Source of the DNA: Anaeramoeba ignava BMAN
Lineage: Eukaryota > Protista > Anaeramoebae
DNA: 64,000 nucleotides
Assembly (NCBI GenBank): GCA_028826165.1
Contig: JAPDFW010000121.1
Location: 103,234-167,233 of the forward strand
Direction: 5' to 3'
A program made the translations under genes and the position numbers. This document shows positions 8,081-54,792 of the stretch, piece by piece. Numbering within the stretch: position 1 is the first letter of the stretch; every line of letters starts with the position of its first letter. Below the pieces are notes generated by a model that ran no database searches, was not told where the DNA came from, and saw only the letters and a list, made by a program, of their open reading frames with translations.

Positions 8081-9295
<1,215 letters not shown>

Positions 9296-9589: not shown

Positions 9590-11765
9590 TTATTAATTTT
9601 TTATTAATTTTTTTAATTATATTAAATTAATATTTATAAATAAATTTATTTAGAATTAGATTTAAAAATAATTTATAAATTAATATTAATTAAAAATAAT
9701 ATAAAATAAAGAAATAAATTTATTTAAATTATTTATTAATTTTTTATTAATTTTTTTAATTATATTTAATTAATATTTATAAATAAATTTATTTAGAATT
9801 AGATTTAAAAATAATTTATAAATAAATATTAATTAATAATAATATAAAATAAAGAAATAAATTTATTTAAATTATTTATTAATTTTTTTATTAATTTTTT
9901 TAATTATATTTAATTAATATTTATTAATAAATTTATTTAGAATTAGATTTATAAATAATTTATAAATAGATATTAATATAAAATAATATAAAATAAAAGA
10001 AATAAATTTATTAAAATTTTTTATTAATTTTTTTATTAATTTTTTTAATTATATTTAATTAATATTTATAAATAAATTTATTTAGAATTAGATTTAAAAA
10101 TAATTTATAAATAGATAATAGTATAAAATAATATAAAAATAAAGAAATAAATTTATTTAAATTATTTATTCATTTTTTTATTAATTTTTTTAATTATATT
10201 TAATTAATATTTATAAATAAATTTATTTAGAATTAGATTTAAAAATAATTTATAAATTAATATTAATATAAAATAATATAAAATAAAGAAATAAATTTAT
10301 TAAAATTTTTATTAATTTTTATTAATTTTTTAATTATATTTAATTATTATTTATAAATAAATTTATTTAGAATTAGATTTAAAAATAATTTATAAATAAA
10401 TATTAATTAAAAATAATATAAAATAAAAGAAATAAATTTATTTAAAATTTTTATTAATTTTTTATTAATTTTTTCAATTATATTTAATTAATATTTATTA
10501 ATAAATTTATTTAGAATTAGATTTAAAAATAATTTAGAAATAAATAATAATATAAAATAATATAAAATAAAGAAATAAATTTATTTAAATTATTTATTAA
10601 TTTTTTATTAATTTTTTTAATTATATTTAATTAATATTTATTAATAAATTTATTTAGAATTAGATTTAAAAATAAATTTATAAATAAATATTAATATAAA
10701 ATAATATAAAATAAAGAAATAAATTTAATAAAATTTTTATTAATTTTTTATTAATTTTTTCAATTATATTTAATTAATATTTATTAATAAATTTATTTAG
10801 AATTAGATTTAAAAATAATTTATAAATAGATAATAATAAAAATAATATAAAATAAAAGAAATAAATTTATTTAAATTTTTTATTAATTTTTTATTAATTT
10901 TTTTAATTATATTTAATTAATATTTATTAATAAATTTATTTAGAATTAGATTTGAAAATAAATTATAAATAGATATTAATTAAAAATAATATAAAATAAA
11001 AGAAATAAATTTATTTAAAATTATTTTATTAATTTTTTATTAATTTTTTTAATTATATTTAATTAATAGTTATTAAATAAATTTATTTAGAATTAGATTT
11101 AAAAATAATTTATAAATAGATAATAATATAAAAATAATATAAAATAAAAGAAATAAATTTTATTTAAATTATTTATTAATTTTTTATTAATTTTTTTTAA
11201 TTATATTTAATTAATATTTATTAATAAATTTATTTAAATTAATTTTAAAAATAATAAATAAATTAGATATTAATATAAAATAATAAATAAAATAAAAGAA
11301 ATAAATTTATTTAAATTATTTATTAATTTTTTATTAATTTTTTTAATTATATTTAATTAATATTTATTAATAAATTTATTTAGAATTAGATTTAAAAATA
11401 ATTTATAAATAAATATTAATTAAAAATAATATAAAAATAAAGAAATAAATTTATTTAAATTTTTATTAATTTTTTATTAATTTTTTTAATTATATTTAAT
11501 TAATATTTATTAATAAATTTATTTAAAATTAGATTTAAAAATAATTTATAAATAAATATTAATATAAAATAATATAAAATAAAGAAATAAATTTATTTAA
11601 ATTATTTATTAATTTTTTATTAATTTTTTTAATTATATTTAATTAATATTTATTAATAAATTTATTTAGAATTAGATTTAAAAATAATTTATAAATAAAT
11701 ATTAATTAAAATAATATAAAATAAAGAAATAAATTTATTTAAATTTTTTATTAATTTTTATTAAA
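9590..11765. repeat. AT-rich tandem array 1, ~144-bp unit, ~15 copies
   Basis: Landmark TTTAGAATTAGATTT recurs at ~9653, 9796, 9940, 10085, 10230, 10370, 10514, 10657, 10800, 10943, 11090, 11383 and 11669. Confidence 0.95.
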
Positions 11766-11874
11766 AATTTTGAATTAAAGAATAGGAAAATAATTTATTT
11801 CACATTCTTACAAATTATTTTGGAAAATGATTTAAAAATTAAAAATTAAAATTGTTTCTGAATGCAAGTAATAA

Positions 11875-13352
11875 TTAATTTGAATCCAATTCATTCAATT
11901 CACTTTCTGATTCAGTAAAATCTTCTAAATCAGTAATTTTTGATTTTGATTTTGATTTTGATTTTGATTTTGATTTTGATTTTGAAATATAATTTGCATC
12001 AAGAAATTCATCTTCATCAAGTAAAGTATCATTAATTGTTGTTTGATCAAAGTTTTTTTTAGACCATTTTCTTTTTAAAGAAGAAATAATTTGATGTCTT
12101 ATTGATTTTACAAAAACAATAAAAATGAGAAAATCCCAAATTCCTTGACTTGGAACAAGAAAAGCTTGAAGAACATCAAGTGTTGTTGAATGTGATACAT
12201 CAGGTTTAATTAATTCTCTGAATCTTTTTACTGTTGATGGAATTGCTATTACTAAATAAACTAATGGAATTAATGTCATTCTTAATTGTACTTTCAGTTT
12301 TTCTTTTTTTCGTCTTTTATCTGAATCTCTTGCTAAATTGGATACTGATTTATATACTTTTCTTATCTTATAAAGACAGAAAATGTAAATTATTAATAAT
12401 ATAACAAGGAAAAACCACCAAATTGAATAAACTGTCCACATTAGATGTGATTCATTTGTATAACACCTTTTTTATTTTAATTTTGATTTTAATTTTAATT
12501 TTAATTTTAATTTTGATTTTGATTTTGATTTTGATTTTAATTTTGATTTTGAATTTAAATTTTGATTTTGATTTTGATTTTGATTTTAATTTTGATTTTA
12601 ATTTTCATTTTGATTTTGATTTTGAATTTGAATTTGATTTTGATTTTGATTTTAATTTTAATTTTAATTTTAATTTTGAATTTGAATTTTGATTTTGATT
12701 TTGATTTTAATTTTAATTTTGATTTTAATTTTGATTTTGATTTTGATTTTGATTTTAATTTTGATTTTGATTTTGATTTTGATTTTGATTTTGATTTTTA
12801 ATTTTGATTTTAATTTTAATTTTGATTTTAATTTTGATTTTAATTTTGATTTTAATTTTAATTTTGATTTTGATTTTGATTTTGATTTTGATTTTAATTT
12901 TAATTTTGATAAAGAAATGAAATAAAAATATACCAATAAGCTCCACCTTTTTTAGGAGAAGCAAAAACAATCCAAATAACACATAAAACAGCAGATAAAA
13001 AAACAGTAAAAACATGGAGTCTTTTTTGTAAATAATTACAAAAAGAATCACGAGTATTAAAAACAATTTTCAAAAAAGTAATAAAAGAAACAGAAGCAGT
13101 CCAAGAAGGAGTAGCACCCAACATAACGCTTATCCAAACAACTTGCACTGAGCAGAGATTATCATTTGAGGGTCCTGGCAATGAAAAAGAAAAGGATAAA
13201 AGAAAATCATATATTGATAAAATAAAGATTAATTTTCGAAATAAATTTCTTAATGATGGATAAGCTATATGTGTTGCCATAATTCCTATTGACCCCATCA
13301 TGCTAAGAATTCCACTTGTTATTGTTAATCCTGCTAATAATCTATAACTCAT
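11875..13352 (-). CDS. 7TM G-protein-coupled receptor, cAMP-receptor-like/GCR1/Git3 type (2 exons)
   Basis: Exon 1 13352-12934, intron 12933-12467 (hexamer repeat), exon 2 12466-11875. Seven hydrophobic segments; motifs LSMMGSIGI, RKLIFILSIYD, LCSVQ, YWCY, IPLVYLVIAIPSTVKR, PSQGIWDFLIF. Confidence 0.85.
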
Positions 13353-13720
13353 TTTTTTTTTGTTTTTTAATAAGATCAAATAATTATTTTAAAAAAAAAG
13401 GAAAAGAAAAAAATAAATTAATTTTTTTTTTTTTGCTTTTTTTTCTTTCTTTTTGAAATCTTTTATTTTTTTTTATTTTCAAAAAAGATCAAAAAATAGA
13501 ACAAAAAAACATTATTACATTGAACAAAAATTTTGAATTTTGATTTTAATTTTGATTTTGATTTTAATTTTGATTTTGATTTTGATTTTGATATTGGATT
13601 TGGATTTTGATTTTGATTTTGGATTTTGATTTTAATTTTAATTTTGATTTTAATTTTGATTTTAATTTTGATTTTGAGTTTGATTTTAATTTTGATTTTG
13701 ATTTTGATTTTGATTTTTAG

Positions 13721-16700
13721 TTATTTTTTGAATGAATTTTTTTTCAGATTTAATTTCAAATTTAAATGAATTTTTTGATTTTCTTCAATTTGATGTTCAT
13801 TTTCAATTTGATTTTCATTCTGATTTTCATTTTCATTTTCTTGAAAATCCAAACCACTTTTCGAATCTTCAGATTCAGTAAAATTTTCTAAATCAGTCAT
13901 TTTATATTTTGAAAAATTTCTTGTAACTTTTGAATGATCCACATTATCTTCATCAAGTAAAATATGATCAACAGTTGAAGAATCTGAATTTTCTTTAAAG
14001 CATTTTCTTTTTAAAGAAGAAATAATTTGATGTCTTATTGATTTGACAAAAACAATAAAAATAAGAAAATCCCAAATTCCTTGACTTGGAAGAAACCAAG
14101 CTTGAAGAACATCAAGGGTTTTGGATGAAGATACATTCGGTTCAACTAAAGAACGAACTCTATTTATTGTTGATGGAAGTGCTAATACTAAATAAACTAA
14201 TGGAATTAATGTCATTCTTAATTGTATTCTTAGCTTTTCTTTCTTTTTCCTTTTTTCTGAATCTCTTGCTATATTTGATACTGATTTATTAATTCTGATC
14301 TTTCGAATACATAAAACGTAAATTATTAATATTATAACAAGGAAAAACCACCAAATTGAATAGATTGTCCAAATAAGAAATGCTTCTTTTGGATAACACC
14401 TTTTTAATTTTAATTTTGATTTTGATTTTGATTTTAATTTTGATTTTGATTTTTAATTTTGATTTTAATTTTGATTTTGATTTTAATTTTCATTTTGATT
14501 TTGTAATTTTGATTTTGATTTTGATTTTGATTTTGATGATTTTGATTTTGATTTTATTTTTTTGAATTTTTGACCTTTTGATTTTGATTTTGATTTTGAT
14601 TTTGATTTTGATTTTGATTTTAATTTTGATTTTGATTTTGATTTTAATTTTGATTTTAATTTTGATTTTGATTTTAATTTTGATTTTGATTTTGATTTTG
14701 ATTTTGATTTTGATTTTGATTTTGATTTTAATTTTGATTTTGATTTTTATTTTGATTTTAATTTTTTTGATTTTTTGAATTTAATTTTGATTTTGATTTT
14801 GATTTTGATTTTGATTTAATTTTGATTTTGATTTTAATTTTGATTTTGATTTTGATTTTGATTTTGATTTTGATTTTGATTTTGATTTTGATTTTGATTT
14901 TGATTTTGGATTTTAATTTTGATTTTAATTTTAATTTTGATTTTGATTTTGATTTTAATTTTGATTTTTAATTTTGATTTTGATTTTAATTTTGATTTTG
15001 ATTTTGATTTTAATTTTGATTTTAATTTTGATTTTTGATTTTGATTTTGATTTGAATTTTAATTTTTGATTTTTTTGATTTTGATTTTGATTTTTGATTT
15101 TGATTTTGATTTTCATTTGATTTTAATTTTTGATTTTTAATTTTGAATTTTGATTTTGATTTTGATTTTTGATTTTGATTTTGATTTTAATTTTGATTTT
15201 GATTTTAATTTTGATTTTGATTTTGATTTTGAATTTGATTTTGATTTGATTTTGATTTTAATTTTTTGAATTTTGATTTTTGATTTTGATTTTTGATTTT
15301 TGATTGATTTGACAAAATTTTGATTTTGAAAATCCCAAATTTTTTTTTGATTTTTTAATTTTGATTTTGATTTTTAATTTTGATTTTGATTTTAATTTTG
15401 ATTTTGATTTTGATTTTGATTTTAATTTTGATTTTGATTTTGATTTTGATTTTGATTTTGATTTTGATTTTGATTTTGATTTTGATTTTGATTTTGATTT
15501 TGGAATTTTGATTTTGATTTTGAATTTTGATTTTGATTTTGATTTTTGATTTTTGATTTTGATTTTTGGATTTGATTTTGATTTTGATTTTTGATTTTGA
15601 ATTTGAATTTTGATTTTAATTTTGATTTTAATTTTGATTTTGATTTTAATTTTGATTTTAATTTTGATTTTAATTTTGATTTTGATTTTGATTTATATTT
15701 TGATTTTGATTTTGATTTTGATTTTGATAAAGAAAGGAAATAAAAATATACCAATAAGAACCACCTTTTTGAGGAGAAACAAAAACAATCCAAATAACAC
15801 AAACAATAGTAGATAAAATTTTAAAAATGAGTTTTAAATAATTACAAAAAGAATCAATTTCAAAAACAATTTTTAAAAGAAACAGAAGCAGTCCAAGAAG
15901 GAGTAGCAGTTAACATCACAGCATTTCAGTTTTTTTTGACAATTTTATTTTTGATTTAATGAAAAGATAAGGATAAAAGATTTTGATTTTGATTTTTAAT
16001 TTTTTTAAATTTGGATTTTTGATTTTATGTTGCCATAATTTTTGACCCAAATTTAGCTAATGTTCCACTTGTTATTGTTAATGCTTCATAGCTTTTTATT
16101 TTCATTTTATATTTTTGATTTTATTTTTGATTTTATTTTGCTTTTTTTTAGGAATTTTTGATTTTGATTTTGAATTTGGAAAAAATTTAATTTTTTCAAA
16201 TTTTGATTTTCTTTTTTTTAATTTTTTATAATTTTAAATAAATTTATTTATAAATAATAATTTAATATTAAATTTTGATTTTAAATTTTGATTTACATTT
16301 ATATTTCAATATTTAATTTAAATATTTATAAATAATTTTTGATTTTTATTTTTTTGATTTTTAAATAATTTTGATTTTTAATTTTAAATTTTAATTAGAA
16401 AATGATATAATAAAAAGGATTTTGATTTTAATAATTTAATTATAATTTTGATTTTAAATTTAATTTTAAATAAATTTATTTTAAATAATTTTAATTTTAA
16501 TTTTAGAAAATTTTAAAAGGGTAAATTTTAATTTTTATTTTAATTTTAATTAAATAAAAATTTTTTGATTTTGATTTTTATTTAAATTAAATTTTTTAAA
16601 TTTTAATTCTGTTTTTGATAAAGAAAGGAAATAAAAATATACCAATAAGAACCACCTTTTTGAGGAGAAACAAAAACAATCCAAATAACACAAACAATAG

Positions 16701-17073
16701 TAGATAAAATAACAGTAAAAATGAGGAGTTTTTTTTGTAAATAATTACAAAAAGAATCACGAGTATTAAAAACAATTTTCAAAAAAGTAATAAAAGAAAC
16801 AGAAGCAGTCCAAGAAGGAGTAGCAGTTAACATCACAGCATTTCCAACAACTTGCACTGAGCAAATAGTGCTATTTTTTGATCCTGGTAATGAAAAAGAT
16901 AAGGATAAAAGAAAATCAAATATTGATAAAATAAAGATTAATTTTCGAAATAAATTTCTTAATGATGGATAATAATTTCTTTAAGCTATATATGTTGCCA
17001 TAATTCCTATTGACCCAAACATAGCTAATGTTCCACTTGTTATTGTTAATGCTTCATAGCTTTTATCGCTCAT
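13721..17073 (-). CDS. Second cAR/GCR1-like 7TM receptor paralog (exon 1 has an in-frame stop from a ~12-nt insertion; pseudogene or assembly error)
   Basis: Exon 1 ATG at 17073 (MSDKSYEALTITSGTLAMFGSIG...) to ~16642; exon 2 14399-13721 (CYPKEAFLIWTIYSIWWFFLV...PSQGIWDFLIF); highly similar to the 11875-13352 gene. Confidence 0.65.
14400..15725. repeat. (TTTTGA/TTTTAA)n intronic hexamer expansion
   Basis: Directly visible; increasingly irregular toward 15300. Confidence 0.9.
15725..16600 (-). other. Degraded, deletion-ridden duplicate of receptor exon 1, its upstream region and tandem array 2
   Basis: Fragments of 16615-17600 (e.g. gaaacagaagcagtccaagaaggagtagcagttaacatcacagcattt, ttagaaaatgatataataaaaagga) occur in order, interleaved with TTTTGA. 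Confidence 0.7.
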
Positions 17074-17219: not shown

Positions 17220-18765
17220 TAATTTAATTTTTAATATAATTTTAAATAAATTTATTTATAAATAATAATTTAATATTTAATTAGAAAATGATATAATAAA
17301 AGGATAAATATTTACATTTATATTTCAATATTTAATTAAATATTTATAAATAATTTATTTATAATTTTATTTTAAATATAATTTTAAATAAATTTATTTA
17401 TAAATAATAATTAAATATTAAATTAGAAAATGATATAATAAAAGGATAAACATTTACATTTATATTTCAATATTTAATTAAATATTTGTAAATAATTTAT
17501 TTATAATTTAATTTTAAATATAATTTTAAATAAATTTATTTATAAATAATAATTTAATATTTAATTAGAAAATGATATAATAAAAAGGATAAAATATTTA
17601 CATTTCTATTTCAATATTTAATTAAATATTTATAAATAATTTATTTATAATTTAATTTTAAATATAATTTTAAATAAATTTATTTATAAATAATAATTTA
17701 ATATTAAATTAGAAAAATGATATAATAAAAGGATATATATATTTGCATTTATATTTCAATATTTAATTAAATATTTGTAAATAATTTATTTATAATTTTA
17801 TTTTAAATCTAATTTTAAATAAATTTATTTATAAATAATAATTAAATATTGAAATTAGAAAATAATATAATAAAAAGGATAAAAATATTTGCATTTATAT
17901 TTCAATATTTAATTAAATATTTGTAAATAATTTATTTAATAATTTTATTTTAAATATAATTTTAAATAAATTTATTTATAAATAATAATTTAATATTTAA
18001 TTAGAAAATGATATAATAAAAAGGATAAATATTTACATTTTATATTTCAATATTTTAAATTAAATATTTATAATTTTTTTAAATAATTTATTTATTTAAT
18101 TTAAATTTTTAAACTATAATTTAATAAATAAATTTATTTTTTATCAATATTTAATTAAATATTTATAAAAATTTATTTATAAAAAATTTTATAATAAAAT
18201 TTTAAATAAATTTATTTACCAATAAATATTTAATTAAATATTTATAAATAAAATTTATTAATAATTTTATTTTTAAATATAATTTTAAATAAAATTTATT
18301 TATAAAATAATAATTTAAATAATTTTAAATTTAATTTTAAAAAATAATTTAATATTTAATTAGAAAATAATATCCCATTTATATTTCAATATTTAATTAA
18401 ATATTTATAAATAATTTATTTATAATTTTAATTTTTAAATATAATTTTAAATAAATTTATTTATAAATAATAATTAAATATTAAATTAGAAAATAATATA
18501 ATAAAAAGGATAAAATATTTACATTTATATTTCAATATTTAATTAAATATTTATAAATAATTTATTTATAATTTTATTTTAAATATAATTTTAAATAAAT
18601 TTATTTATAAATAATAATTAAATATTAAATTAGAAAATGATATAATAAAAGGATAAATATTTGCATTTCTATTTCAATATTTAATTAAATATTTGTAAAT
18701 AATTTATTTATAATTTTATTTTAAATCTAATTTTAAATAAATTTATTAATAAATAATAATTTAAT
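17220..18765. repeat. AT-rich tandem array 2, ~143-bp unit, ~10 copies (degenerate middle)
   Basis: Landmark TTAGAAAAT(G/A)ATATAATAAAAGG at ~17284, 17426, 17568, 17712, 17858, 18004, 18489 and 18633. Confidence 0.93.
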
Positions 18766-19090
18766 ATAATTAAAAAAATTAATAAAAAATTAATAAAAGA
18801 AAAAATTATCTATTTTTTAAGTAAAAAAAATTTTAATAAAGGAAATAAAAGAAATTAAAAAGGAAATATTAAGGAAATCTTTAATAAAATTCATTCCAAA
18901 AAAAAGATCAAATAAATTATTTATTTAATTATTTAATTAAGTTTTAAAATTTTGATATTTTTTGATCTTGTCTTCTTTTTATTTTTAAAATTATTTTTTT
19001 AATTTTTTTATTTTTCATTTTTTTCCTTTTTTTTATTTTCCCAAATTTTAATTTTAACAAAAATAAAAACTCAAAAAAATAAAAAATTCA

Positions 19091-19901
<811 letters not shown>

Positions 19902-20499
19902 TCTTTTTTAAAAAATTATTTTTCTTTTTTCTTTTTTTAAAAATTTCATTAAAATTTTATTTTTAATCCTCTTTATTCTTTTATTTTTAATTTTTATTTT
20001 GATTTTTATTTTGATTTTGATTTTAATTTTGATTTTTAATTTTAATTTTGATTTTCATTTTGATTTTGATTTTGATTTTGATTTTGATTTTGATTTTGAT
20101 TTTGATTTTGATTTTGATTTTGATTTTGATTTTGATTTTGATTTTCATTTTGATTTTGTTTTTCATTTTGATTTTTATTTTCTAATTGATTTTGATTTTA
20201 ATTTTGATTTTGATTTTGATTTTGATTTTGATTTTGATTTTAATTTTGATTTTGATTTTCATTTTGATTTTGTTTTTCATTTTGATTTTGATTTTGATTT
20301 TTGATTTTGATTTTGATTTTGATTTTCATTTTTCATTTTAATTTTCATTTTCATTTTCATTTTCATTTTGATTTCAATTTTGATTTTGATTTTGATTTTC
20401 TAATTGATTTTAATTTTGATTTTGATTTTCTAATTGATTTTAATTTTGATTTTGATTTTGATTTTGATTTTGATTTTGATTTTGTTTTTCATTTTGATT

Positions 20500-22109
20500 T
20501 TCATTTTTGAAAAAAAAGTTTGGTCCTTCTTGTGGTTCAAGAAATCCATGAAAAACAATTGGCGATTCAGATAAATTCCAACGAGCTCCATATTCTTTAT
20601 AAATTATAAATTATAAATTATAAAATATAAAATATAAAATAAATTATTAAAATAATTGGAATAAAAGTTATTTATACCTTCAGAATTACGAATTTCGAAA
20701 GTATTCATTTCACTTTTTTGATTACCATTTACAATCTAAAATAAAAATATTTAATTTAATTTCGAAATTTAAATAATAAATGTAAAAATATTTACAGGTA
20801 ATAAATGAATATTAACCCAAGATAAATCCTTTAAAATTTTAATTAAACATTCTTCTGCAATTTTATTTTGAGCTTCAGTTGAACCACGAAGCTTTCCTTG
20901 TAACCACCAACTCTTTTCTGAACGTGAATAATGCTTTGCCAAAGCACGAGCACCCACAGATAATTGAACAGGTTGTTTTTTTGGTTTTTCAATTTTGATA
21001 TTTTTTTTCCCTAAATTTTCAAGTGTTTTTGCTAACCTTTCTTTTCTTGCTTTTTCTTTCTGTATCATTTTCTGTGTGATAAAAGGTGCATTAAAGGAAT
21101 GGAAAAGTTCTTGGATTGTTGGTGGGAAAATATTATATATAGAACTTAGTGTTATTCTTAATTGCAAAAGAGTTCTAACTCCATCAATTCCAAGTGAATT
21201 TAATAAAGATATCAATTGATTTTCTTTTTGATTTTCTTTTTCATTTTCAATTTGATTTTGATTTTGATTTTGATTTTCATTTTGATTTTCATTTTGATTT
21301 TGATTTTGATTTTGATTTTGATTTTGGTTTTGATTTTGATTTTGATTTTGATTTTCTTTTTCATTTTCAATTTGATTTTCTTTTTCATTTTGATTTTTAT
21401 TTTGATTTTGATTTTGATTTTCATTTTCATTTTCATTTTCATTTTGATTTTGATTTTCATTTTCATTTTCTTTTTCATTTTGATTTTTATTTTGATTTTG
21501 GTTAATAAATAACTCTTTCACTTTATTTGTTAGTTTTGCGATTTCTTGATATCTTTCTTGAATTTCAGGTATATTTTTAAAAGGAATAAATTTATATGGA
21601 AATTCATTTTTTTCTTCCCAAAGCTTAAGTGAATAAATAATGTGTTTATAATATGGTTTAAATGGATATCTAGGAAAATATTTTTGTGGATCCTTCAAAA
21701 AATTTTTATTCTGATTTTCATTTTGATTTTCATTTTGATTTTCATTCTGATTTTCATTTTCATTCTGATTTTTATTCTGATTTTGATTTTGATTTTGATT
21801 TTGATTCTGATTTTCATTCTGATTTTCATTCTGATTTTCATTTTGATTCTGATTTTGATTCTGATTTTCATTTTCATTTTCATTTTCATTTTCATTTTGA
21901 TTTTGATTTTGATTTTCATTTTGATTTTGATTTTGATTTTGATTTTGATTTTGATTTTGATTTTGATTTTGATTTTCTTCTTCTTTTCCTTCATCTAAAA
22001 GTCTATTTGAGATTTCGATCGTTAACCAACTAACTTTTGAAATGTTATTTTCTTGAACTTGTTTTAAAATTTTTAAAAAAATTGATTCAAGAAATTTTAA
22101 AGAAATCAT
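20500..22109 (-). CDS. Protein with the C-terminal domain of plant ASCH-associated proteins (GARALAKH...FEIR...YGARW...FxGFLEP), putative nuclease fold; 3 exons, 3' end runs into QN repeats
   Basis: Exon 1 22109-20796, exon 2 20735-20678, exon 3 from ~20594 give LSVGARALAKHYSRSEKSWW...GSTEAQNKIA...WVNIHLLP-IVNG...FEIRNSEEYGARWNLSESPIVFHGFLEP. The stop codon is not resolved. Confidence 0.7.
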
Positions 22110-22144
22110 TTTATTTTTTGAAAATGAAAAATGAAAAATGGAAA

Positions 22145-22918
22145 ATGATTTAATTTAATATTTAATTTATAAATTAATTTAAAAATATAATTTAATATTC
22201 AATTTTATGTTTAAAATAATATTTTATTGTTTTAGATTTAAATATTTTATTATTTAATTAATAAACAAAAAAATATCAAAAATAAGAATAGATTTAATTT
22301 AATATTTAATTTATAAATTAATTTAAAAATATAATTTAATATTCAATTTTATGTTTAAAATAATATTTTATTGTTTTAGATTTAAATATTTTATTATTTA
22401 ATTAATAAACAAAAATATCAAAAATGAGAATAGATTTAATTTAATATTTAATTTATAAATTAATTTAAAAATATAATTTAATATTCAATTTTGTGTTTAA
22501 AATAATAATTTATTGTTTTAGATTTAAATATTTTATTATTTAAATATTTAACATATAAATATAAAAAATGAGAATAGATTTAATTTAATATTTAATTTAT
22601 AAATTAATTTATAAATATAATTTATTAGTTAATTTTATGTTTAAAATAATAATTTATTGTTTTAGATTTAAATGTTTTATTATTTAATTAATAAACAAAA
22701 ATATCAAAAATAAGAATAGATTTAATTTAATATTTAATTTATAAATTAATTTAAAAATATAATTTAATATTTAATTTTATGTTTAAAATAATAATTTAAT
22801 GTTTTAGATTTAAATATTTTATTATTTAAATATTTAACATATAAATATAAAAATGAAAATAGATTTAATTTAATATTTAATTTATAAATTAATTTAAAAA
22901 TATAATTTAATATTCAAT
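22145..22918. repeat. AT-rich tandem array 3, ~143-bp unit, ~5.4 copies
   Basis: Landmark GATTTAATTTAATATTTAATTTATAAATT at ~22147, 22291, 22433, 22577, 22719 and 22862. Confidence 0.95.
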
Positions 22919-23039
22919 TTTAATTTTAATTTTAATTTTAATTTTGATTTTGATTTTAATTTTGATTTTGATTTTAATTTTAATTTTAATTTTAATTTTA
23001 ATTTTAATTTTAATTTTAATTTTAATTTTAATTTTAATT

Positions 23040-24798
23040 TTAATTTTGATTATTAAATTTTTTAATTAATAAATCAAATAAATTTGGATTTGTTTGATTT
23101 AATTGAAAATAATCAATTCCTGTTTCTAATTCATCAATGATTTCTTGTGTAATTTGAATTTCATTTTTAATTTGATTTGAATAAATCCAATATTCAAATA
23201 TTTGAAATGATTTATTACTTAATTCACTATAATCTGTAACTTTATTTGATTTATCTTCAGTTACAGATAAAAACATTCCTCGATATAATTCACTTCTCAT
23301 TATTAATATTAATTTTGGAAATTTATATTGTTTTTCTTTTCTTTCAATTATAAAATCTTTTTCATTTTCATTTTCATTTAAATAAATTCTTTTCATTGTT
23401 TCTTCAATTTTTTCATTTGAATTTATAATTTCTTTAATTTCAAAATATAATTTTGGATTTATTTTGGAATTGTTTGAATAAATCATTTCAAATATTTGAT
23501 TAGATTCTTTAATTGATTTTTTTGAAATAATTTCTTGAAGTTTTTCAATTTGATTTTCATCTTTTAATCTATATTTTAATATTAATTTATGAGCTTCAAT
23601 TATTTCTCCATTTTCTGTTTTAAATGAAATATTACAAAATTCTTTTCTTTCAAATAATTTTATCAAATCTTCTTCGAGATTGGAAAAAGAAGAAGGAGAA
23701 TAATAAAGAAATGATTTATAATCACCACAAGAAATATGATAATTAGAAATATCTTGATTAAATCTTAATTTAGGAAGTTCAATTTGAATTGGAATTGATT
23801 GTTCTTTTGTATTTCCAATTCCTAATTGAGCATAATCATTATCTCCAAATACTATCATTTTCCCTTTGGAAGTTAAAATCAAATTGTGAAAACATCCAGC
23901 AAAAATTTCAAGAATATTATCATCATTTTTAAATAAGGATGATTTAATTTCAGTAAATTCATAAGTATCTTTATTTTTGCCAAGTCCATTAAAAAAATAT
24001 CTTCCACATGAATAAACTTTTCTTTTTGGATTTTCATTTTCATTTTCATCTTCAATCAACATTATTGAATGAGCATATCCACATTGAATATCAATTATTT
24101 TACCTTTTGGAATATTTTGGATTTTGGTTAATTTTTCGATTCTTTCTTCTTTTATTGATTCTCCTAATCCAACTTGACTATATTCATTATTTCCGCATCC
24201 AAATAATTCTTGATTTGAATTTAAAAGAAAAAAATGATTTGAATCATTTCCTGGAAATATTTTAGAAACATTTTTCATCATTAAAATTGGTTTTTCTGTT
24301 TTTGGAAGTGTTTTAGAATCAAATCCAAGTTGACTATATTCATTAGAACCAAATTCCATAAACATTTTGATTTGAAGTTAATAAATAAATTGATTCAGCT
24401 CCAGAAACAATATCTTGAATTACTTTATCATTTGGATCTTCAATTAATGATGAAATATTGATAAATTCATTTGGATTTTTTGAATTAATATCATCTTCTT
24501 TGGCAAATACATTTCCTTCTTTTGTTAAAATAGCTTCATTTCTATAACCAACAGTTACTTTTTGGATATTTTCAATTTGGATTTTTTCAGGATTTTGGTA
24601 TGAATATTCTATTGCTTTTCCATTTTCAAAAAGGAAAATTGTTGCAAAACCTCCTGATGAAATTTGTTTAATTTGTTTTTCATTTTCATTTTCATTTTCA
24701 TTTTCAAATTTAAATTGAATTGGTTTTGTTATTTTATCTGGTTTATTTTTGATAAGTTTTGGATTTTGATTTTGACCAAAAAATATAATTTCATTCAT
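23040..24798 (-). CDS. RCC1 + BTB family protein with a 1-nt frameshift at ~24352
   Basis: The two ORFs (24343-24798 and 23040-24365) join; the coding strand reads GGAATTTGGTTC where paralogs read GGAATTGGTTC. Confidence 0.85.
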
Positions 24799-29359: not shown

Positions 29360-29519
29360 TTTATATTTTGTTTTAAATTTAAATTTAAAGAAGAAAAAAA
29401 TGAAAAAAAAAAATGAAAAAAAAATTTTTGCTTTTTGTTTTTTTTTTTTTATTAAAACAAATTTTAAAAAATAAAACAATAAAAAGATTTTTTTTCTTCT
29501 TTTTTCTTTTTTCTTTCTT

Positions 29520-33590: not shown

Positions 33591-33679
33591 ATAGATATTT
33601 CAAAAAAAAAAAGAAAAAAAATGAAAAAAAAAATTTTGATGAAATAAAAAAATCCAAAAACAAAAAAAGAAAAAAAAAA

Positions 33680-34415: not shown

Positions 34416-34490
34416 AATAAGTCAAAAAATAAAATAATACACTATAAAAAGCAATTTTTTTAAAAAAATTTTTTCATTTTTTCAAATCAA

Positions 34491-34982: not shown

Positions 34983-35289
34983 AAAAGCAAAAAATTTAAT
35001 CAAAAAGAGGAAAAAATTTTTCACCTTTTTTTTAGCTTTTTTCTTTTTCTTTTTTCTTTTGAATTTTCTTTTGAATTCCAATTTTCAATTCCAATTTTCA
35101 TTTCAATTCCAATTTTCATTTCAATTCCAATTTTCAATTTTTCATTTCAATTCCAATTTTCTTTATTGAAAAATTTTTTTTTGCTTTTTCTCATTCAAAT
35201 TCAATAAAGAAAAAAAAAATTTTAATTTAAATTTTTTATTTTCATTTTTTTTTTCGAATAATAAATTTTAAAATAATAAAATAATAAAA

Positions 35290-41622: not shown

Positions 41623-44192
41623 ATGATTGAATTTAATCAAAATCTTAAAAAACCAAGAACTGAAGAAGAAATTCAAAAAGAAAATCAAGATAAAACTCAA
41701 AATTTAAAAATTTATTATGGTATTTTATTTTTAAAATTAAAAAATTAAAAATTAATAAAAAAATTAATAAAAAAATAAAGATTATTTCTTTCCTTTTCAA
41801 CAAATTTTTGAATGGCTTTCTTATGGAAATTGTAAATAATAATAAATTTTAAAAAATTAAAAAAATTAAAAAAATTAAAAAAATAATAATAAAAATAATA
41901 AAAAGTGGATTTTTTTCATTTCAGAGAATTTTCATTTCTTTCTTCTAATATAATTAGAAGATTTGTTTCATTTGAAAATGTAACAGAATTTCAAAGATAT
42001 GTTTCAATGAATATTCCCCAAAAAATTGATTATGGAGCAATTTATAATTATCCAGTAAAAAAAAATAAATAATTTCAAATTAAAAAATAAATTTCGAAAA
42101 ATTCAATTCGTTTCAAAAAATCCAAAACCAATAGCCAAATAAAAGGAATGAAATCACTGAATTTCAACCCAAGAAAAAAGAGTTAATTTTTGATATTGAT
42201 ATTACTGATTATGACGATTGTAGAACTTGTTGTTCTGGAACTAATATTTGTAACAAATGCTGGATCTTTTTAGTTGTTGCAATAAAAACTCTCGAATATA
42301 TTTTAAGAAATCAATTTGCTTTTCGCAATATTCTTTGGGTTTTTAGTGGAAGAAGAGGTGTTCATTGTTGGGTTTGTGATAAAACTGTTCTTGATTCTTC
42401 AGATTCTCTTCGCAAAAATATTGTTAATTTTATTTTTTTTGAGAATGATGAAAAAAAACCTTTGACTCCAAATCAACTGTATTTAATAACAATTAATCTA
42501 AATCAAAAATTAAATTGAAAATTAAAATTAAAATGAAAATCAAAATCTAAATCAAAATCAAAATCTAAATATAAATATAAATATAAATCAAAATATAAAT
42601 ATAAATCTAAATCAAAATCAAAATTAAAATTAAAATCAAAACCAAAATCAAAATCTAAATCAAAATCAAAATTAAAATCAAAATCAAAATCAAAATCAAA
42701 ATCAAAATCAAAAATCAAAATCAAAATCAAAATCAAAATCTAAATCAAAATCAAAATCAAAATCAAAATCAAATTTAAAATGAAAATCAAAATCAAAATC
42801 AAAATCAAAATCAAAATCAAAATCAAAATCAAAATCAAAATCAAAATCTAAATTAAAATCAAAATCAAAATCAAAATAAAAAATCAAAATCAAAATCAAA
42901 ATTAAAATTAAAATTAAAATAAAAATTAAAATAAAAATCAAAATCAAAATCAAAATTAAAATCAAAATCTAAATCAAAATCAAAATCTAAATATAAATAT
43001 AAATATAAATCAAAATCTAATTATAAATCAAAATCAAAATCAAAATCAAAATCTAAATCAAAATTAAAATCAAAATCAAAATCAAAATCAAAATCAAAAT
43101 CAAAATCAAAATCAAAATCAAAATCAAAATTAAAATTAAAATCAAAATCAAAAATCAAAATCAAAATCAAAATCAAAATCAAAATTAAAATCAAAATCAA
43201 AATCTAAATCTAAATCTAAATTAAAATCAAAATCAAAATCAAAATCAAAATTAAAATTAAAATTAAAATTAAAATCAAAATTAAAATCAAAATCAAAAAC
43301 AAAAATTAAAATCAAATTTAAAATGAAAATCAAAATTAAAATTAAAATCAAAATCAAAATCAAAATCAAAATAAAAATCAAAATCAAAATCAAAATCAAA
43401 ATCAAAATCAAAATCTAAATCTAAATCTAAATCAAAATTTAAAATTAAAATCAAAATAAATCAAAATCAAAATCAAAATCAAAATCAAAATCAAAATCTA
43501 AATTAAAATCAAAATTAAAATCTAAATTAAAATCAAAATCAATCAAAATCAAAATCAAAATCTAAATTTAAAATCAAAATCAAAATTAAAATCAAAATCT
43601 AAATATAAATCAAAATCAAAATCAAAATCAAAATCAAAATTAAAATAAAAATCAAAATCAAAATCAAATTCAAATTGAAAATCAAAATTAAAATAGGGAA
43701 ATTTATAATGAAATTCTTGAACCATATTTCAAAAAAGTAATTGAAACACAAGAGTTATTTGAAAAACCAGAAAATTGGCAAAAAGTATTAAAATTTGTTA
43801 AAGAAGAAGAAATTCAGAAAAAAATAGAAAAAGATTTTGAACAATTACCAGATTCAAAATCAAGATACGAATATTTACAAACAATGGATTATTCAAAAAT
43901 TTTACCACAAATTATATTTGGAGTAATTTATCCAAGACTTGATATTAATGTGAGCAAAACAATGAATCATTTATTGAAAAGTCCTTTTTGTATTCATCCT
44001 TCAACTCAACAAGTTTGTGTTCCTATTGATCCTCAAAAATGTGAAGATTTTGATCTTAAACTTGTTCCTCAATTAAATAATTTAGTTGATGAATTTAATG
44101 AAAAAGGAATTAATTCAATTCCTCAATCAAAATTTTTAAATTATTATATCAAAAAATTATTTATTCAAGATTTTTTGGATAAATTAAAATGA
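41623..44192 (+). CDS. PRIM1: DNA primase small (catalytic) subunit, 5 exons
   Basis: FPFQQIFEWLSYG, REFSF, KIDYGAIY, KELIFDIDITDYDDCRTCCSG, WVFSGRRGVHCWVCD, YPRLDINVSKTMNHLLKSPFCIHP. Confidence 0.95.
42500..43690. repeat. (TCAAAA/TTAAAA/TCTAAA)n intronic hexamer repeat (~1.2 kb) in the primase gene
   Basis: Lies between the GT at ~42479 and the AG at ~43696. Confidence 0.92.
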
Positions 44193-51921: not shown

Positions 51922-51929
51922 ATTTATTT

Positions 51930-51962
<33 letters not shown>

Positions 51963-52129: not shown

Positions 52130-53087
52130 TCAATTTTCATATTCATTTTCATATTCATTTTCATATTCATTTTCAGAAAAATTAGGAGAATTTTGAGGAT
52201 TAGTTTCTTCAATAAAAATCATATCATTATTTGAATCACTATTTAAGTCATCTTCTTCAAATTCAATAGAAATTTGTGAAATATCTTTATCTAAAAAAGT
52301 AGAATATTTTTTAAAAATTTCCAAAAGAATTTTTTGAGGAGAAACATAAGGAATTATTTGTGCTTGAGAAGGATCAAGAACTTGAGGTTTTTTAAAGAAA
52401 AAGGGAATTACAGAGAGTTCTTCTTGAGAAATATTTGGAATTAATTTTAAAAATCTTTTTCTTGTTGTTTTGATTACAAGACGTTTTTCTGGAGGATTTT
52501 GTTCAATTTCTGAATCTGTAATTTTTCTTTTTTTTCTTGTTAATCTTCTTTCTTTATTATTTCTAGGAAAATTATAAGTTCGAAATATATTTTGATTTCT
52601 AAATGAATTTTGATTTTGATTTTGATTTCTAAATGAATTTTGATTTAGATTTCCAAATGAATTTTGATTTTGATTTCCAAATAAATTTTGATTTTGATTT
52701 CCAAATGAATTTTGTTTTTGATTTTGATTTTGATTTCCAAATAAATTTTGATTTTGATTTTGATTTGAATTTAAAGATAAATTTCTAAATAAATTCGAAT
52801 TCCTTCTTATTTTTGGTTCATATTTGTAAAAAATCCGATTGTTTATGTTTTGCTTTCCCTTTTTCTTCAAATCCTAAATCATTTGGTTCTTGAATAATTG
52901 GTTCGTAATTTGTTCTTTTTGTGTTTTCTTCATTTATATTTGAATTATCACTTGAAATTTCTTCAATCATAAATGTCTGATTTTTTAAATTTGTTTCTTT
53001 ATTATTTTCTTGATTTATTGTAAAAGAATTTTTATTTAAATTTAAATTTAAATTTGAATTTAAATTGGGAAAAAAACTTTTAATCAT
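52130..53087 (-). CDS. Hypothetical low-complexity protein (NQN-LFG/SFG repeats, basic NLS-like patch), one frameshift near 52860
   Basis: The overlapping ORFs 52818-53087 and 52130-52870 have coding-like composition; no recognisable domain. Confidence 0.5.
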
Positions 53088-53204
53088 TTTTTAAATAAAT
53101 AAAAAATAAAAAAAAATAAAAAAAATAAAAAAAAATTTTTTCTTTTATACTGAGAAGTGATCTTTTTCACGGCTTAAACGAAAAAAAAATAAATAAAAAA
53201 CTTT

Positions 53205-54792
53205 TAATTAAATATTTTATTAATAATTTAATAATAAAAATTAATATAAAAAATTAAAATAAAATTATAAATTATTTATAAATTATATTTTATATTAATT
53301 TATATTATTAAGTATTAATTAAATATATTATCAAAAATGAATATAAAATTAATTAAATATTTTATTAATAATTTAATAATAAAAATTAATATAAAAATTA
53401 AAATAAAATTATAAATTATTTATAAATTATATTTTATATTAATTTATATTATTAAGTATTAATTAAATATATTATCAAAAATGAATATAAAATTAATTAA
53501 ATATTTTATTAATAATTTTAATAATAAAAATTAATATAAAAAATTAAAATAAAATTATAAATTATTTATAAATTATATTTTATATTAATTTATATTATTA
53601 AGTATTAATTAAATATGTTAATAAAAATAAATATAAAATTAATTAAATATTTTATCAATAATTTAATAATAAAAATTAATATAAAAATTAAAATAAAATT
53701 ATAAATTATTTATAAATTATATTTTATATTAATTTATATTATTAAGTATTAATTAAATATATTAAGAAAAATAAATATAAAATTAATTAAATATTTTATT
53801 AATATTTTAATAATAAAAATTAATATAAAAAATTAAAATAAAATTATAAATTATTTATAAATTATATTTTATATTAATTTATATTATTAAGTATTAATTA
53901 AATATATTAAGAAAAATAAATATAAAATTAATTAAATATTTTATTAATATTTAATAATAAAAATTAATATAAAAATTAAAATAAAATTATAAATTATTTA
54001 TAAATTATATTTTATATTAATTTATATTATTAAGTATTAATTAAATATATTAAGAAAAATGAATATAAAATTAATTAAATATTTTATTAATATTTTAATA
54101 ATAAAAATTAAAATAAAAATTAAAATAAACTTATAAATTATTTATAAATTATATTTTATATTAATTTATATTATTAATTATTAATTAAATATATTATCAA
54201 AATGAATATAAAATTAATTAAATATTTTATTAATAATTTAATAATAAAAATTAATATAAAAATTAAAATAAACTTATAAATTATTTATAAATTATATTTT
54301 ATATTAATTTATATTATTAAATATTAATTAAATATAATATTAAAAATAAATATAAAATTAATTAAATATTTTATTAATAATTTAATAATAAAAATTAATA
54401 TAAAAATTAAAATAAACTTATAAATTATTTATAAATTATATTTTATATTAATTTATATTATTAAGTATTAATTAAATATATTAAGAAAAATAAATATAAA
54501 ATTAATTAAATATTTTATTAATATTTTAATAATAAAAATTAATATAAAAATTAAAATAAAATTATAAATTATTTATAAATTATATTTTATATTAATTTAT
54601 ATTATTAAGTATTAATTAAATATATTATTAAAAATGAATATAAAATTAATTAAATATTTTATTAATATTTTAATAATAAAAATTAAAATAAAAAATTAAA
54701 ATAAACTTATAAATTATTTATAAATTATATTTTATATTAATTTATATTATTAAGTATTAATTAAATATATTAATAAAAATGAATATAAAATT
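53205..54792. repeat. AT-rich tandem array 4, ~144-bp unit, ~11 copies
   Basis: Landmark TATTAAGTATTAATT with G at 53312, 53456, 53602, 53746, 53891, 54034, 54465, 54609 and 54754. Confidence 0.95.

What the first reader, a model, noticed from the sequence alone, without database searches (positions are those of the whole stretch)
9590..54792. Four sequence-distinct intergenic tandem arrays share one ~143-145 bp period
Seen: arrays at 9.6-11.8 kb (~15 units), 17.2-18.8 kb (~10), 22.1-22.9 kb (~5) and 53.2-54.8 kb (~11) have different unit sequences but landmark spacings of 140-147 bp, centred on ~144. All are nearly pure A/T, and each lies directly upstream of a gene start (9295, 17073/19091, 22109, 53087). 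Established: nucleosome core DNA is ~146-147 bp. Inference: a length-templated amplification process (nucleosome- or Okazaki-fragment-sized duplication) or selection for a chromatin, origin or promoter module defined by length rather than sequence. No listed feature type explains this.
Basis: partly seen in the sequence, partly recalled or inferred. Interest (0 to 1): 0.85.

Follow-up and report, generated by a model that had tools for sequence, protein, structure and literature searches.

The report
Dispersed 144-bp A/T-only satellite arrays
The four arrays are real and belong to a genome-wide class of short, almost pure A/T satellite arrays in the anaerobic protist Anaeramoeba ignava, in which mutually unalignable repeat families nearly all repeat every ~144 bp: an unusually sharp case of the known tendency of satellite DNA towards nucleosome-scale units, not a new kind of element.

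Summary
Tandem Repeats Finder confirms the four arrays at the stated places: 143 bp x15.1, 142 x10.6, 142 x5.6 and 144 x11.0, with 2-6% G+C. The stated gene starts are also correct. The genome is Anaeramoeba ignava BMAN, matched exactly on size and scaffold number.

"Sequence-distinct" is only partly right. Arrays 1 and 2 are about 78% identical in opposite orientation and lie in an inverted segmental duplication that also carries two E2 genes. Array 3 belongs to a family found at 35 or more other loci. Array 4 is private.

In 264 kb examined, 13 of 18 A/T-only arrays with units over 100 bp have 142-146-bp units (86 monomers, 143.8 +/- 1.9 bp). They fall into five families with no detectable similarity. 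The others are one 124-bp array and a 167-169-bp family at four loci. A family-blind probe found two more ~144-bp families, plus one of ~160 bp and one of ~180 bp.

I found no 10-bp AA/TT phasing, no shared symmetry and no 144-bp higher order in the neighbouring 6/12-bp arrays.

Best reading: dispersed satellite DNA spread by gene-cluster duplication, homogenised locally, with monomer length held constant. The cause of that constancy is inferred, not shown. Other first-stage readers noted the same pattern on other contigs. Read support could not be tested.

The parts
9589..11764 (.). Array 1 (family C): 15 monomers of 141-148 bp (mean 143.9), G+C 2%. It starts 294 bp upstream of the E2 gene ATG at 9295 (- strand) and ends 111 bp from the 3' end of a 7TM gene (11875, - strand).
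   Evidence: TRF; monomer segmentation; ORFs
17220..18788 (.). Array 2 (family C, in reverse-complement orientation relative to array 1): 11 monomers of 137-146 bp (mean 142.7). It is the least homogeneous array (82% matches, degenerate centre). It lies between divergent starts at 17073 (-) and 19091 (+).
   Evidence: TRF (78% identity to array 1 in RC orientation; nhmmer 26/16 bits against at most 5 for decoys); ORFs
22127..22929 (.). Array 3 (family A): 5.6 monomers of 141-144 bp with weak dimeric higher order (286 bp). It starts 18 bp upstream of the ATG at 22109 (-) and lies 3' of an RCC1-BTB gene (23040-24798, -). The same family occurs at 35 or more other loci at 88-94% identity.
   Evidence: TRF
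53204..54792 (.). Array 4 (family D, private to this locus): 11 monomers of 143-146 bp (mean 144.3), 96% matches, G+C 2%. It lies between the ATG at 53087 (-) and the 3' end of a mitochondrial-type Hsp70 gene (54896, -).
   Evidence: TRF (no other locus above 76%, which is close to the level reversed decoys reach)
8646..9588 (-). Left flank of array 1, carrying the E2 (UQ_con) gene start at 9295. It is one arm of an inverted segmental duplication that runs up to the edge of the array.
   Evidence: BLAST: 91.9% identity over 962 bp to 18798-19747 in opposite orientation; ORF
18798..19747 (+). Right flank of array 2, carrying the paralogous E2 gene (ATG at 19091). It is the other arm of the inverted duplication.
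   Evidence: ORFs; Pfam UQ_con E=8.7e-11
23040..24429 (-). 3' part of an RCC1-BTB gene that travels with family A arrays. The stretch is 89.7% identical over 1399 bp to the flank of another family A array on contig C126. Its last 327 bp (23040-23366) recur as a 311-bp gene fragment between family A and family B arrays.
   Evidence: Pfam

Best explanation
The arrays are non-coding satellite DNA of Anaeramoeba ignava in the 'dispersed short array' pattern. They are short head-to-tail arrays of an almost pure A/T monomer of about 144 bp, 0.3-2.2 kb long (2-15 monomers), and they occupy intergenic spacers of a gene-dense genome. Extrapolated from 264 kb, they make up about 5% of the sequence and number roughly 2,000 arrays.

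Shown:
- Arrays are copied to new places together with their neighbouring genes by segmental duplication. Examples are the inverted E2-plus-array duplication giving arrays 1 and 2, and families A and B flanking RCC1-BTB/TLDc gene copies.
- Some families are present at dozens of loci and others are private to one locus.
- Monomer length is the same across families that are no longer alignable.

Inferred:
- Arrays grow, shrink and are homogenised locally by unequal exchange or replication slippage (concerted evolution). In a two-letter alphabet this makes copies at different loci unrecognisable quickly.
- The families therefore most likely descend from one or a few old ~144-bp satellites.
- Their length is held by a stabilising constraint. 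The likeliest candidate is the way this A/T-only DNA is packaged in chromatin, not any sequence motif.
For: - Tandem structure, periods, copy numbers and composition.
- Genome-wide class: in window plus C126:100001-300000 (264 kb), 13 A/T-only arrays have units of 142-146 bp, against one of 124 bp and a 167-169-bp family at four loci. No well-conserved A/T-only array of 3 or more copies has a unit between 40 and 120 bp or between 150 and 165 bp.
- Family A has 35 or more loci at 88-94% identity among only 40 scored candidates. Its 16-mer landmark gives 224 hits against 1 for the control, mostly spaced at multiples of 143-146 bp. Family B has 40 or more loci at 91-96%.
- Families A-E are unlinked by consensus alignment against Markov-3 and reversed-decoy nulls and by nhmmer profiles.
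- Dispersal with genes: flank homologies of 90-97% over 0.3-1.5 kb; gene content.
- Concerted evolution: arrays 1 and 2 are 93% and 82% homogeneous internally but 78% identical to each other, while their flanks are 92% identical.
- Length constancy: family means are 143.7, 145.7, 143.3, 144.3 and 142.6 bp (SD 1.2), no wider than the monomer scatter inside arrays (SD 1.9).
- The array 1/array 2 alignment has 9 indel events with a net length change of 0.
- An independent probe found new ~144-bp families at C2:333190-335109 and C14:77684-78268.
- Literature: nucleosome-length monomers and dispersed euchromatic short arrays are known (PMC8122249, PMC10048060).
Against: - Common descent of families A-E is assumed, not shown. 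No intermediate links were found. D to C scores 67-69, about the 99th percentile of the null; E to A scores 7 bits against a decoy maximum of 5.
- The indel-compensation test is not significant (P=0.14).
- Part of the monomer-length scatter may be Nanopore homopolymer error, so the 'indels are frequent yet length is stable' argument is soft.
- No sequence signature of nucleosome positioning was found.
- 144 bp is too short for a canonical core plus linker.
- Only 0.6% of the genome could be read in full.
- Other periods (124, ~160, 167-169, ~180 bp) exist, and other readers report 146-168 bp, so the peak may be broader genome-wide.
- Copy numbers were not checked against reads.
Confidence: 0.6

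Rival explanations
1. Independent origins with a length-templating mechanism. New tandem duplications in A/T-only DNA are born at about 144 bp because breaks or priming events are spaced by a chromatin particle or an Okazaki-fragment-sized unit. Each family then arises de novo and is amplified afterwards.
For: Five to seven families show no detectable similarity yet share one period. Private single-locus families D and E exist. The length spread between families is as narrow as the spread within arrays.
Against: No nascent duplication of novel sequence was seen. Both 2-copy 144/145-bp repeats are family A or B remnants. The 6- and 12-bp arrays under the same conditions show no 144-bp higher order. 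Observed spread is by segmental duplication. Periods of 124, 160, 168 and 180 bp also occur. In A/T-only DNA, reversed decoys already reach 70-73% BLAST identity, so loss of alignability is expected quickly and does not prove independent origin.
Confidence: 0.13
2. Functional chromosomal modules defined by length. The arrays would be replication origins, dispersed (holocentric-like) centromere units binding a CenH3 particle, or promoter/insulator spacers, and selection for that function would keep the unit length.
For: - Spacing of about 1 per 20 kb, size of 0.6-2.2 kb and ~97% A/T resemble A/T-rich origin islands and Plasmodium-type centromere cores (my own knowledge, not tested here).
- Scattered satellites are reported as typical of holocentric nematodes (PMC3634726).
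- Arrays lie 18-300 bp from ATGs.
- A divergent histone-fold hit exists besides the canonical ones.
Against: Nearly all other spacers are also A/T-only tandem arrays of 6/12-bp units, so composition and position do not single out the 144-bp class. There is no orientation preference beyond what co-directional gene clusters give. No motif is conserved across families. No binding or expression data are available.
Confidence: 0.1
3. Higher-order repeats of the ubiquitous 12-bp A/T minisatellites. The ~144-bp unit would be 12 diverged copies of a 12-mer that became the unit of homogenisation (12 x 12 = 144; 168 = 14 x 12; 180 = 15 x 12).
For: 12-bp arrays of many different sequences are the commonest long A/T-only arrays. 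Lag 12 is the best self-similarity lag in 3 of 6 consensus units. The A/T pattern has roughly 6-bp alternation in most families. Some 144-bp spacings elsewhere are 4 x 36 bp.
Against: The lag-12 signal is not significant in any single unit (0.55-0.58 against a 95% shuffle level of 0.56-0.62). Spectral power at harmonics 11-13 averages about 1, the white-noise level. Long 12-mer arrays show smooth decay with no step at 144 bp. The idea does not explain why 12 copies rather than 11 or 13 are preferred. Many monomers are 143 or 145 bp.
Confidence: 0.1
4. Assembly artefact. The arrays or their copy numbers would be products of the Nanopore-based assembly.
For: Read support could not be examined. 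Arrays are frequent near contig starts. Short-read contigs hold only 31-54% of the sampled words of 52800-55300.
Against: Arrays are 0.6-2.2 kb, far shorter than long reads. Each has its own pattern of monomer variants and unique flanks. The same families recur at dozens of loci. Five runs from two studies hold part of the stretch; partial word recovery is what collapsed short-read contigs of a tandem array give.
Confidence: 0.03

Closest known systems
Nucleosome-length satellite DNA (e.g. primate alpha satellite 171 bp, Arabidopsis 178 bp, maize CentC 156 bp; reviewed in PMC8122249, surveyed in PMC4053949)
   Same: Head-to-tail non-coding arrays that are A/T-rich, with a monomer on the scale of one nucleosome. 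They show locus-specific homogenisation and weak dimeric or trimeric higher order. Monomer length is conserved while sequence turns over.
   Different: The arrays here hold 2-15 monomers, not kilobases to megabases. There are hundreds to thousands of them in gene-dense DNA rather than in centromeric or pericentric blocks. They are 94-98% A/T. The monomer (144 bp) is shorter than a nucleosome core plus linker. Several unalignable families in one genome share the length to within +/-1.5 bp, whereas PMC4053949 found no general rule for monomer length.
Dispersed euchromatic short satellite arrays (pattern b of PMC10048060: Crassostrea gigas, Tribolium castaneum euchromatic satDNAs, Drosophila 1.688 repeats near genes)
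   Same: Short arrays of fewer than about 15 monomers are scattered along chromosomes near genes. They are often adjacent to short arrays of other satellites and move as parts of larger repeated modules.
   Different: In those animals dispersal is usually tied to transposons (Helitrons, MITE-like elements). Here the carriers seen are duplicated host gene clusters (E2, RCC1-BTB, BTB/TLDc), and no transposon feature was found. The composition is far more extreme. Many families share one period.
Scattered satellites of holocentric organisms (nematodes, PMC3634726; Rhynchospora Tyba repeats, from my own knowledge)
   Same: Many small satellite arrays are distributed genome-wide rather than at one site per chromosome.
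   Different: Nothing is known about centromere type in Anaeramoeba. The nematode satellites vary in length between families, while Tyba is a single 172-bp family. No CenH3 data exist here.
Plasmodium falciparum centromere cores (about 2 kb, about 97% A/T, tandem-repetitive; from my own knowledge)
   Same: The size and A/T content of each block are similar, and both occur in an ~80% A/T protist genome.
   Different: Plasmodium has one core per chromosome. Here there is about one array per 20 kb, and the unit length is well defined.

Membership tests
Satellite DNA (tandem non-coding repeats with complex monomers) | Head-to-tail tandem copies of a monomer of about 100 bp or more, in several copies | tested here: met
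   TRF finds 5.6-15.1 copies of 142-144-bp units at 82-96% matches. Segmentation into 42 monomers in the window.
Satellite DNA (tandem non-coding repeats with complex monomers) | Non-coding | tested here: met
   G+C is 2-6%. No ORF of 70 aa or more lies inside arrays 1-3, and no ORF of 150 aa or more overlaps any of the four arrays. Arrays lie between verified ATGs and 3' ends of genes.
Satellite DNA (tandem non-coding repeats with complex monomers) | The same family is present at many genomic sites, with arrays more homogeneous within than between loci (concerted evolution) | tested here: met
   Family A has 35 or more loci and family B 40 or more. Arrays 1 and 2 are 93% and 82% homogeneous internally against 78% between them. 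Families D and E are single-locus.
Classical heterochromatic satellite | Long arrays (tens of kb to Mb) clustered in centromeric, pericentric or subtelomeric blocks | tested here: not met
   The longest array seen is 2.2 kb. Arrays are interspersed with genes about every 20 kb. Some enrichment near contig starts was noted but not tested.
Nucleosome-positioning repeat | About 10-bp periodicity of AA/TT or TA steps, or DNA curvature signal, within the unit | tested here: not met
   Normalised power at harmonic 14 (10.2 bp) averages 0.7 (A-T signal), 0.7 (AA/TT) and 0.2 (TA), where white noise gives 1. The strongest harmonics are at about 4-6 bp.
Nucleosome-positioning repeat | Unit length equals the organism's nucleosome repeat length | not testable with these tools
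   No MNase data are available. Core histones and one linker-histone domain are encoded. 144 bp is below 147 bp plus linker.
Centromeric repeat | One region per chromosome, or CenH3 occupancy | tested here: not met
   The one-per-chromosome criterion fails: 18 arrays in 264 kb. CenH3 occupancy is not testable here.
Transposon-borne tandem repeats (Helitron/MITE-associated satDNA) | Arrays embedded in an element with conserved termini or transposon genes | tested here: inconclusive
   The conserved flanks are host-type genes (UQ_con, RCC1-BTB, TLDc) and their fragments. No transposon domain was seen, but termini and target-site duplications were not searched systematically.

The most novel reading that the evidence does not exclude
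Anaeramoeba ignava may package its A/T-only spacers in a repeating chromatin unit of about 144 bp. That would be either the shortest nucleosome repeat known or a sub-nucleosomal or CenH3-like particle. Satellite monomers of any sequence would then be selected, or generated, to fit that unit. The roughly 2,000 dispersed arrays would be length-defined chromosomal modules (for example dispersed kinetochore or origin units) rather than neutral repeats.
Probability: 0.1. Interest if true: 0.8.

Novelty: new variant of a known kind. Interest (0 to 1): 0.5.

Why it matters
What sets the monomer length of satellite DNA is an old open question. The usual evidence is one dominant satellite per species compared across species.

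Here a single small genome (42.8 Mb) of a culturable protist appears to hold many mutually unalignable satellite families that agree in length to about +/-1.5 bp. They are written in an almost two-letter alphabet and sit in short arrays that long reads span completely.

That makes the question directly testable. MNase-seq, CenH3/ORC mapping and comparison with A. flamelloides could tell whether chromatin, recombination or mere descent fixes the length.

It also matters practically. About 18% of the DNA examined is A/T-only tandem arrays, which affects assembly, gene-model boundaries and promoter definition in this genome. BLAST statistics are also misleading on such DNA. The published genome paper (PMC11550330) does not mention these repeats.

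Tried and rejected
- **Read support.** Only local scripts on the window file touched them.
- **Genome-wide TRF histogram.** The fetch from genomes stopped after 200 kb, and the genome search could not cut loci. The histogram therefore rests on 264 kb plus coordinates of hits.
- **BLAST hits of 68-76% between arrays** (part) were rejected as evidence of homology. Reversed decoys give 70-73% identity and E-values down to 1e-36.
- **Dyad symmetry of units** is inconsistent across families.
- **10-bp AA/TT or TA periodicity** is absent.
- **A T-rich/A-rich skew wave** appears in only 2 of 9 units.
- **144-bp higher order inside 6/12/18-bp arrays** is absent.
- **Internal sub-repeats of the units.** None is significant. 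The 124-bp unit is built of 17-mers.
- **Promoter association** is not distinguishable from the co-directional gene order.
- **Indel-compensation test** gave P=0.14 and is not significant.
- **Family-blind pattern probe.** Total counts were swamped by imperfect 12-mer arrays: 230, 280 and 226 matches for spacings of 99-129, 130-160 and 161-191 bp. Only the listed complex arrays were informative.
- **Organism identification by protein hits** was ambiguous. The look-up of encoding contigs found nothing. Identity was settled by the exact genome size and scaffold count in Table S1 of PMC11550330.


Full report

| Array | Window place | Period (bp) | Copies | Matches |
|---|---|---|---|---|
| 1 | 9589-11764 | 143 | 15.1 | 93% |
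| 2 | 17220-18788 | 142 | 10.6 | 82% |
| 3 | 22127-22929 | 142 | 5.6 | 93% |
| 4 | 53204-54792 | 144 | 11.0 | 96% |

- The consensus units have 2.1-6.3% G+C.
- Cutting the arrays monomer by monomer gives lengths of 137-148 bp and array means of 143.9, 142.7, 142.6 and 144.3 bp.
9295 and 19091 start two paralogous E2 ubiquitin-conjugating enzyme genes. 17073 starts a 7TM protein. 22109 and 53087 start two low-complexity proteins.

**Organism.** The genome search reports that the window is C122:103234-167233 of a genome of 42,843,398 bases in 147 contigs. Table S1 of PMC11550330 gives exactly these two numbers, and 19.35% G+C, for Anaeramoeba ignava BMAN.
- This is a Nanopore plus Illumina assembly of an anaerobic marine metamonad with 14,837 genes.
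- The paper's main text and supplements contain no mention of satellites, tandem repeats or intergenic regions.
- A literature search for Anaeramoeba together with satellite, centromere or nucleosome terms listed no Anaeramoeba paper among its top results.

**Is the shared period a property of the genome?** Only 200 kb more could be fetched (C126:100001-300000). That stretch was chosen by coordinates fixed in advance.
- It holds seven further A/T-only arrays of four or more copies with periods of 143-145 bp, and two 2-copy remnants of 144 and 145 bp.
- It also holds one array of 124 bp and a 167-169-bp repeat present twice at each of four loci.
- Repeats with higher G+C, which are mostly coding, have unrelated periods: 84, 105, 126, 130, 193, 252, 435 and 564 bp.
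- All 86 monomers of the 11 arrays that were segmented measure 143.8 +/- 1.9 bp.
- The 142-146-bp arrays occupy 9.6% of the window and 4.0% of the C126 stretch. Extrapolated, that is about 2,100 arrays and 2.3 Mb.
- Ten or more other first-stage notes on other contigs of this genome report the same thing, with units of 142-168 bp. They are unchecked leads, but they agree with these results.

**Are the arrays sequence-distinct?** Partly. Care is needed because in 97% A/T DNA ordinary BLAST statistics fail. Reversed (not complemented) arrays, which cannot be homologous, are hit at 70-73% identity with E-values down to 1e-36. The 68-76% hits of array 4 to more than 200 places therefore mean nothing. 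I used two nulls: a third-order Markov null (99th percentile 67, maximum 73) with reversed decoys for cyclic consensus alignment, and nhmmer profiles with reversed decoys (maximum 4.9 bits). The arrays then fall into these families:

| Family | Arrays | Unit (bp) |
|---|---|---|
| A | array 3 and five C126 loci | ~144 |
| B | three C126 loci | ~145 |
| C | arrays 1 and 2 | ~143 |
| D | array 4 | ~144 |
| E | one C126 locus | ~143 |
| F | one C126 locus | 124 |
| G | four C126 loci | 167-169 |

- Arrays 1 and 2 are clearly related: 78% identity in reverse-complement orientation, alignment score 76-79, and 26 and 16 bits by nhmmer.
- No other pair of families is linked. The best cross-family values (D to C 67-69; E to A 7 bits) sit at the edge of the nulls.
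- So at least five families with no detectable similarity have mean periods of 143.7, 145.7, 143.3, 144.3 and 142.6 bp.
- If periods were uniform on 100-200 bp, 5 of 7 families within 3 bp would have P of about 1e-4.

**How the arrays spread.**
- The 943 bp to the left of array 1 (8646-9588) are 91.9% identical, in inverted orientation, to the 950 bp to the right of array 2 (18798-19747). The homology runs to within 10 bp of the array edges. An E2 gene with its upstream array was thus duplicated in inverted orientation around a tandem pair of 7TM genes. Since then the arrays have diverged to 78%, against 92% for the flanks, while keeping 143 and 142 bp.
- Family A arrays lie just 3' of RCC1-BTB genes: the gap is about 110 bp at array 3 and 6 bp at two C126 loci. 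The flank of array 3 (23040-24429) is 89.7% identical over 1399 bp to that of a C126 array.
- A 311-bp 3' fragment of such a gene recurs between a family A array and a family B array. Family G doublets adjoin family B arrays, and BTB/TLDc genes lie beside them.
- Genome-wide, family A matches 35 or more separate loci at 88-94% among only 40 scored candidates of 1,209. A 16-base landmark of its unit occurs 224 times against once for the control, mostly at spacings that are multiples of 143-146 bp.
- Family B matches 40 or more loci at 91-96%.
- Array 1 has relatives at 77-80% on many contigs.
- Families D and E have no close relative elsewhere.
- I saw no transposon domain. The carriers are duplicated host gene clusters.

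**A family-blind check.** I chose a degenerate 13-mer that is absent from every known array and cannot sit in a perfect 12-bp repeat. I then asked for two copies at spacings of 99-129, 130-160 and 161-191 bp.
- Totals (230, 280, 226) are dominated by imperfect 12-mer arrays and show only a modest excess in the middle window.
- Among the listed complex arrays the middle window contains two new multi-copy arrays: C2:333190-335109 (144-146 bp, six adjacent pairs) and C14:77684-78268 (142-144 bp, four pairs).
- It also contains one array of about 160 bp (C59) and isolated single matches at spacings of about 130-152 bp.
- The upper window has one array of about 180 bp (C71) and one isolated match at about 167 bp. 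The lower window has only multiples of short units.

**What the units do not have.**
- No common reverse-complement symmetry.
- No power at the helical harmonic, where 10.2 bp averages at or below white noise for A-T, AA/TT and TA signals.
- No common T-rich/A-rich wave.
- No significant internal sub-repeat.
- What they do share is balanced A and T, runs mostly of 1-4 bases with a roughly 6-bp alternation, and three to nine scattered G/C.

**Context.** Almost every A/T-only island of 300 bp or more in the 264 kb is a tandem array. Such islands make up 18% of the sequence. The rest have periods of 6, 12, 18 or 36 bp, with many different 12-mers. Those short-period arrays show a smooth decay of self-identity with distance and no step at 144 bp. 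This argues against a process that imposes 144 bp on any A/T-only DNA.

The genome encodes canonical core histones at 15 loci and one linker-histone domain. Nucleosomes are therefore expected, but 144 bp is shorter than a 147-bp core plus any linker. 'Nucleosome-sized' is a resemblance, not a fit.

**Mechanism.**
- Shown: tandem arrays; dispersal with flanking genes by segmental duplication; higher identity within arrays 1 and 2 than between them; constancy of length across unalignable families.
- Inferred: expansion, contraction and homogenisation by unequal exchange or slippage; descent of the families from one or a few old ~144-bp satellites, with similarity lost quickly because chance identity in this alphabet is already about 70%; a stabilising constraint on length.
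- The argument for a constraint is that the family means (SD 1.2 bp) scatter no more than monomers within arrays (SD 1.9 bp), although indels are frequent. There are nine indel events between arrays 1 and 2 with net change 0.
- The argument is weakened by possible Nanopore homopolymer errors and by the non-significant compensation test (P=0.14).
- The nature of the constraint is not established. It could be chromatin packaging, minimal homology for recombination, or a function as origin, centromere-like or promoter spacer.

**Comparison with what is known.** Satellite monomers of nucleosomal length are a textbook tendency (PMC8122249), though not a rule (PMC4053949). Short satellite arrays dispersed in euchromatin near genes, often next to short arrays of other satellites, are a recognised organisational pattern (PMC10048060). 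Scattered satellites have been linked to holocentry in nematodes (PMC3634726).
- The arrays meet the defining features of satellite DNA tested here.
- They fail those of classical heterochromatic or monocentric centromere satellites and of sequence-encoded nucleosome-positioning repeats.
- What is unusual is the combination: a compact protist genome, 94-98% A/T, about one array per 20 kb, and several unalignable families agreeing in length to about +/-1.5 bp.

**Limits.**
- Raw reads were not examined. 
- Five runs from two studies hold 31-54% of the sampled words of 52800-55300 as short-read contigs. This is compatible with a collapsed tandem array and says nothing on copy number.
- Only 0.6% of the genome was read in full.

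**Verdict.** The claim of four distinct sequences needs correction, because arrays 1 and 2 are paralogous. The proposed templating mechanisms have no support. The feature is satellite DNA of a known organisational kind in an unusually sharp and accessible form.

Noticed in passing
window 661-1020, 2741-3220, 8197-8740, 28732-36131; C126 sample (L001-L020), e.g. L018:9773-L019:3222: Almost every A/T-only island of 300 bp or more is a tandem array. Apart from the ~144-bp class, the periods are nearly all 6, 12, 18 or 36 bp. There are many different 12-mers, and arrays reach 3.4 kb (285 copies). A/T-only islands make up 18% of the 264 kb examined.
   Followed up: partly
window 5933-7378, 12469-12910, 14402-15728, 19985-20507, 21216-21976, 42495-43694: Hexamer arrays with one G or C per unit (TTTTGA, AATCAA and relatives) run through open reading frames. 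They encode long dipeptide repeats, (NQ)n, (KI)n and (SK)n, e.g. in ORFs 6867-7877(-) and 20769-22109(-).
   Followed up: no
window 11875-17073 (- strand) and 8646-9588 / 18798-19747: Two tandem paralogues of a 7TM membrane protein are bracketed by an inverted pair of E2 ubiquitin-conjugating enzyme genes (92% identical flanks). Each E2 gene has a family C array about 300 bp upstream of its ATG.
   Followed up: yes
L002:1754-2391, L005:1278-2497, L013:7272-L014:5444 (C126:111754-112391, 141278-142497, 227272-235444): A composite repeated module recurs at least four times in 200 kb beside BTB/TLDc genes. It consists of a family A array, an RCC1-BTB gene or only its last 311 bp, a family B array, and a 167-169-bp doublet (family G).
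   Followed up: partly
window 942-2777, 3169-4908, 23040-24798, 57176-58498, 59097-60875: Five RCC1-repeat genes lie in one 64-kb window; four of them carry a BTB domain and 57176-58498 shows RCC1 repeats only. More copies lie on C126. This is a strongly expanded gene family.
   Followed up: partly
window 54896-56923 (- strand): This mitochondrial (DnaK-type) Hsp70 of 675 aa is only 70% identical to the A. ignava protein M0811_14047 returned by the protein search. It is equally close (70-71%) to alphaproteobacterial DnaK. It may be a second organellar Hsp70 paralogue.
   Followed up: no
hits, e.g. G000:C2:3034-6623, C3:5889-7747, C28:7941-11079, C115:8546-10958, C1:8636-13234: Many ~144-bp arrays lie within 3-25 kb of contig starts. 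They may be subtelomeric, or they may be places where the assembly breaks.
   Followed up: no
window 27077-27702 and 62470-63709: A 126-bp coding repeat (5 copies) lies inside the 1168-aa ORF 24907-28413(-). A 687-bp tandem duplication carries two paralogous 151-aa ORFs (62520-62975 and 63207-63662).
   Followed up: no
any A/T-only stretch: BLAST between A/T-only arrays gives 70-73% identity and E-values down to 1e-36 against reversed, non-homologous decoys. Similarity claims on this genome's spacers need decoy controls.
   Followed up: yes
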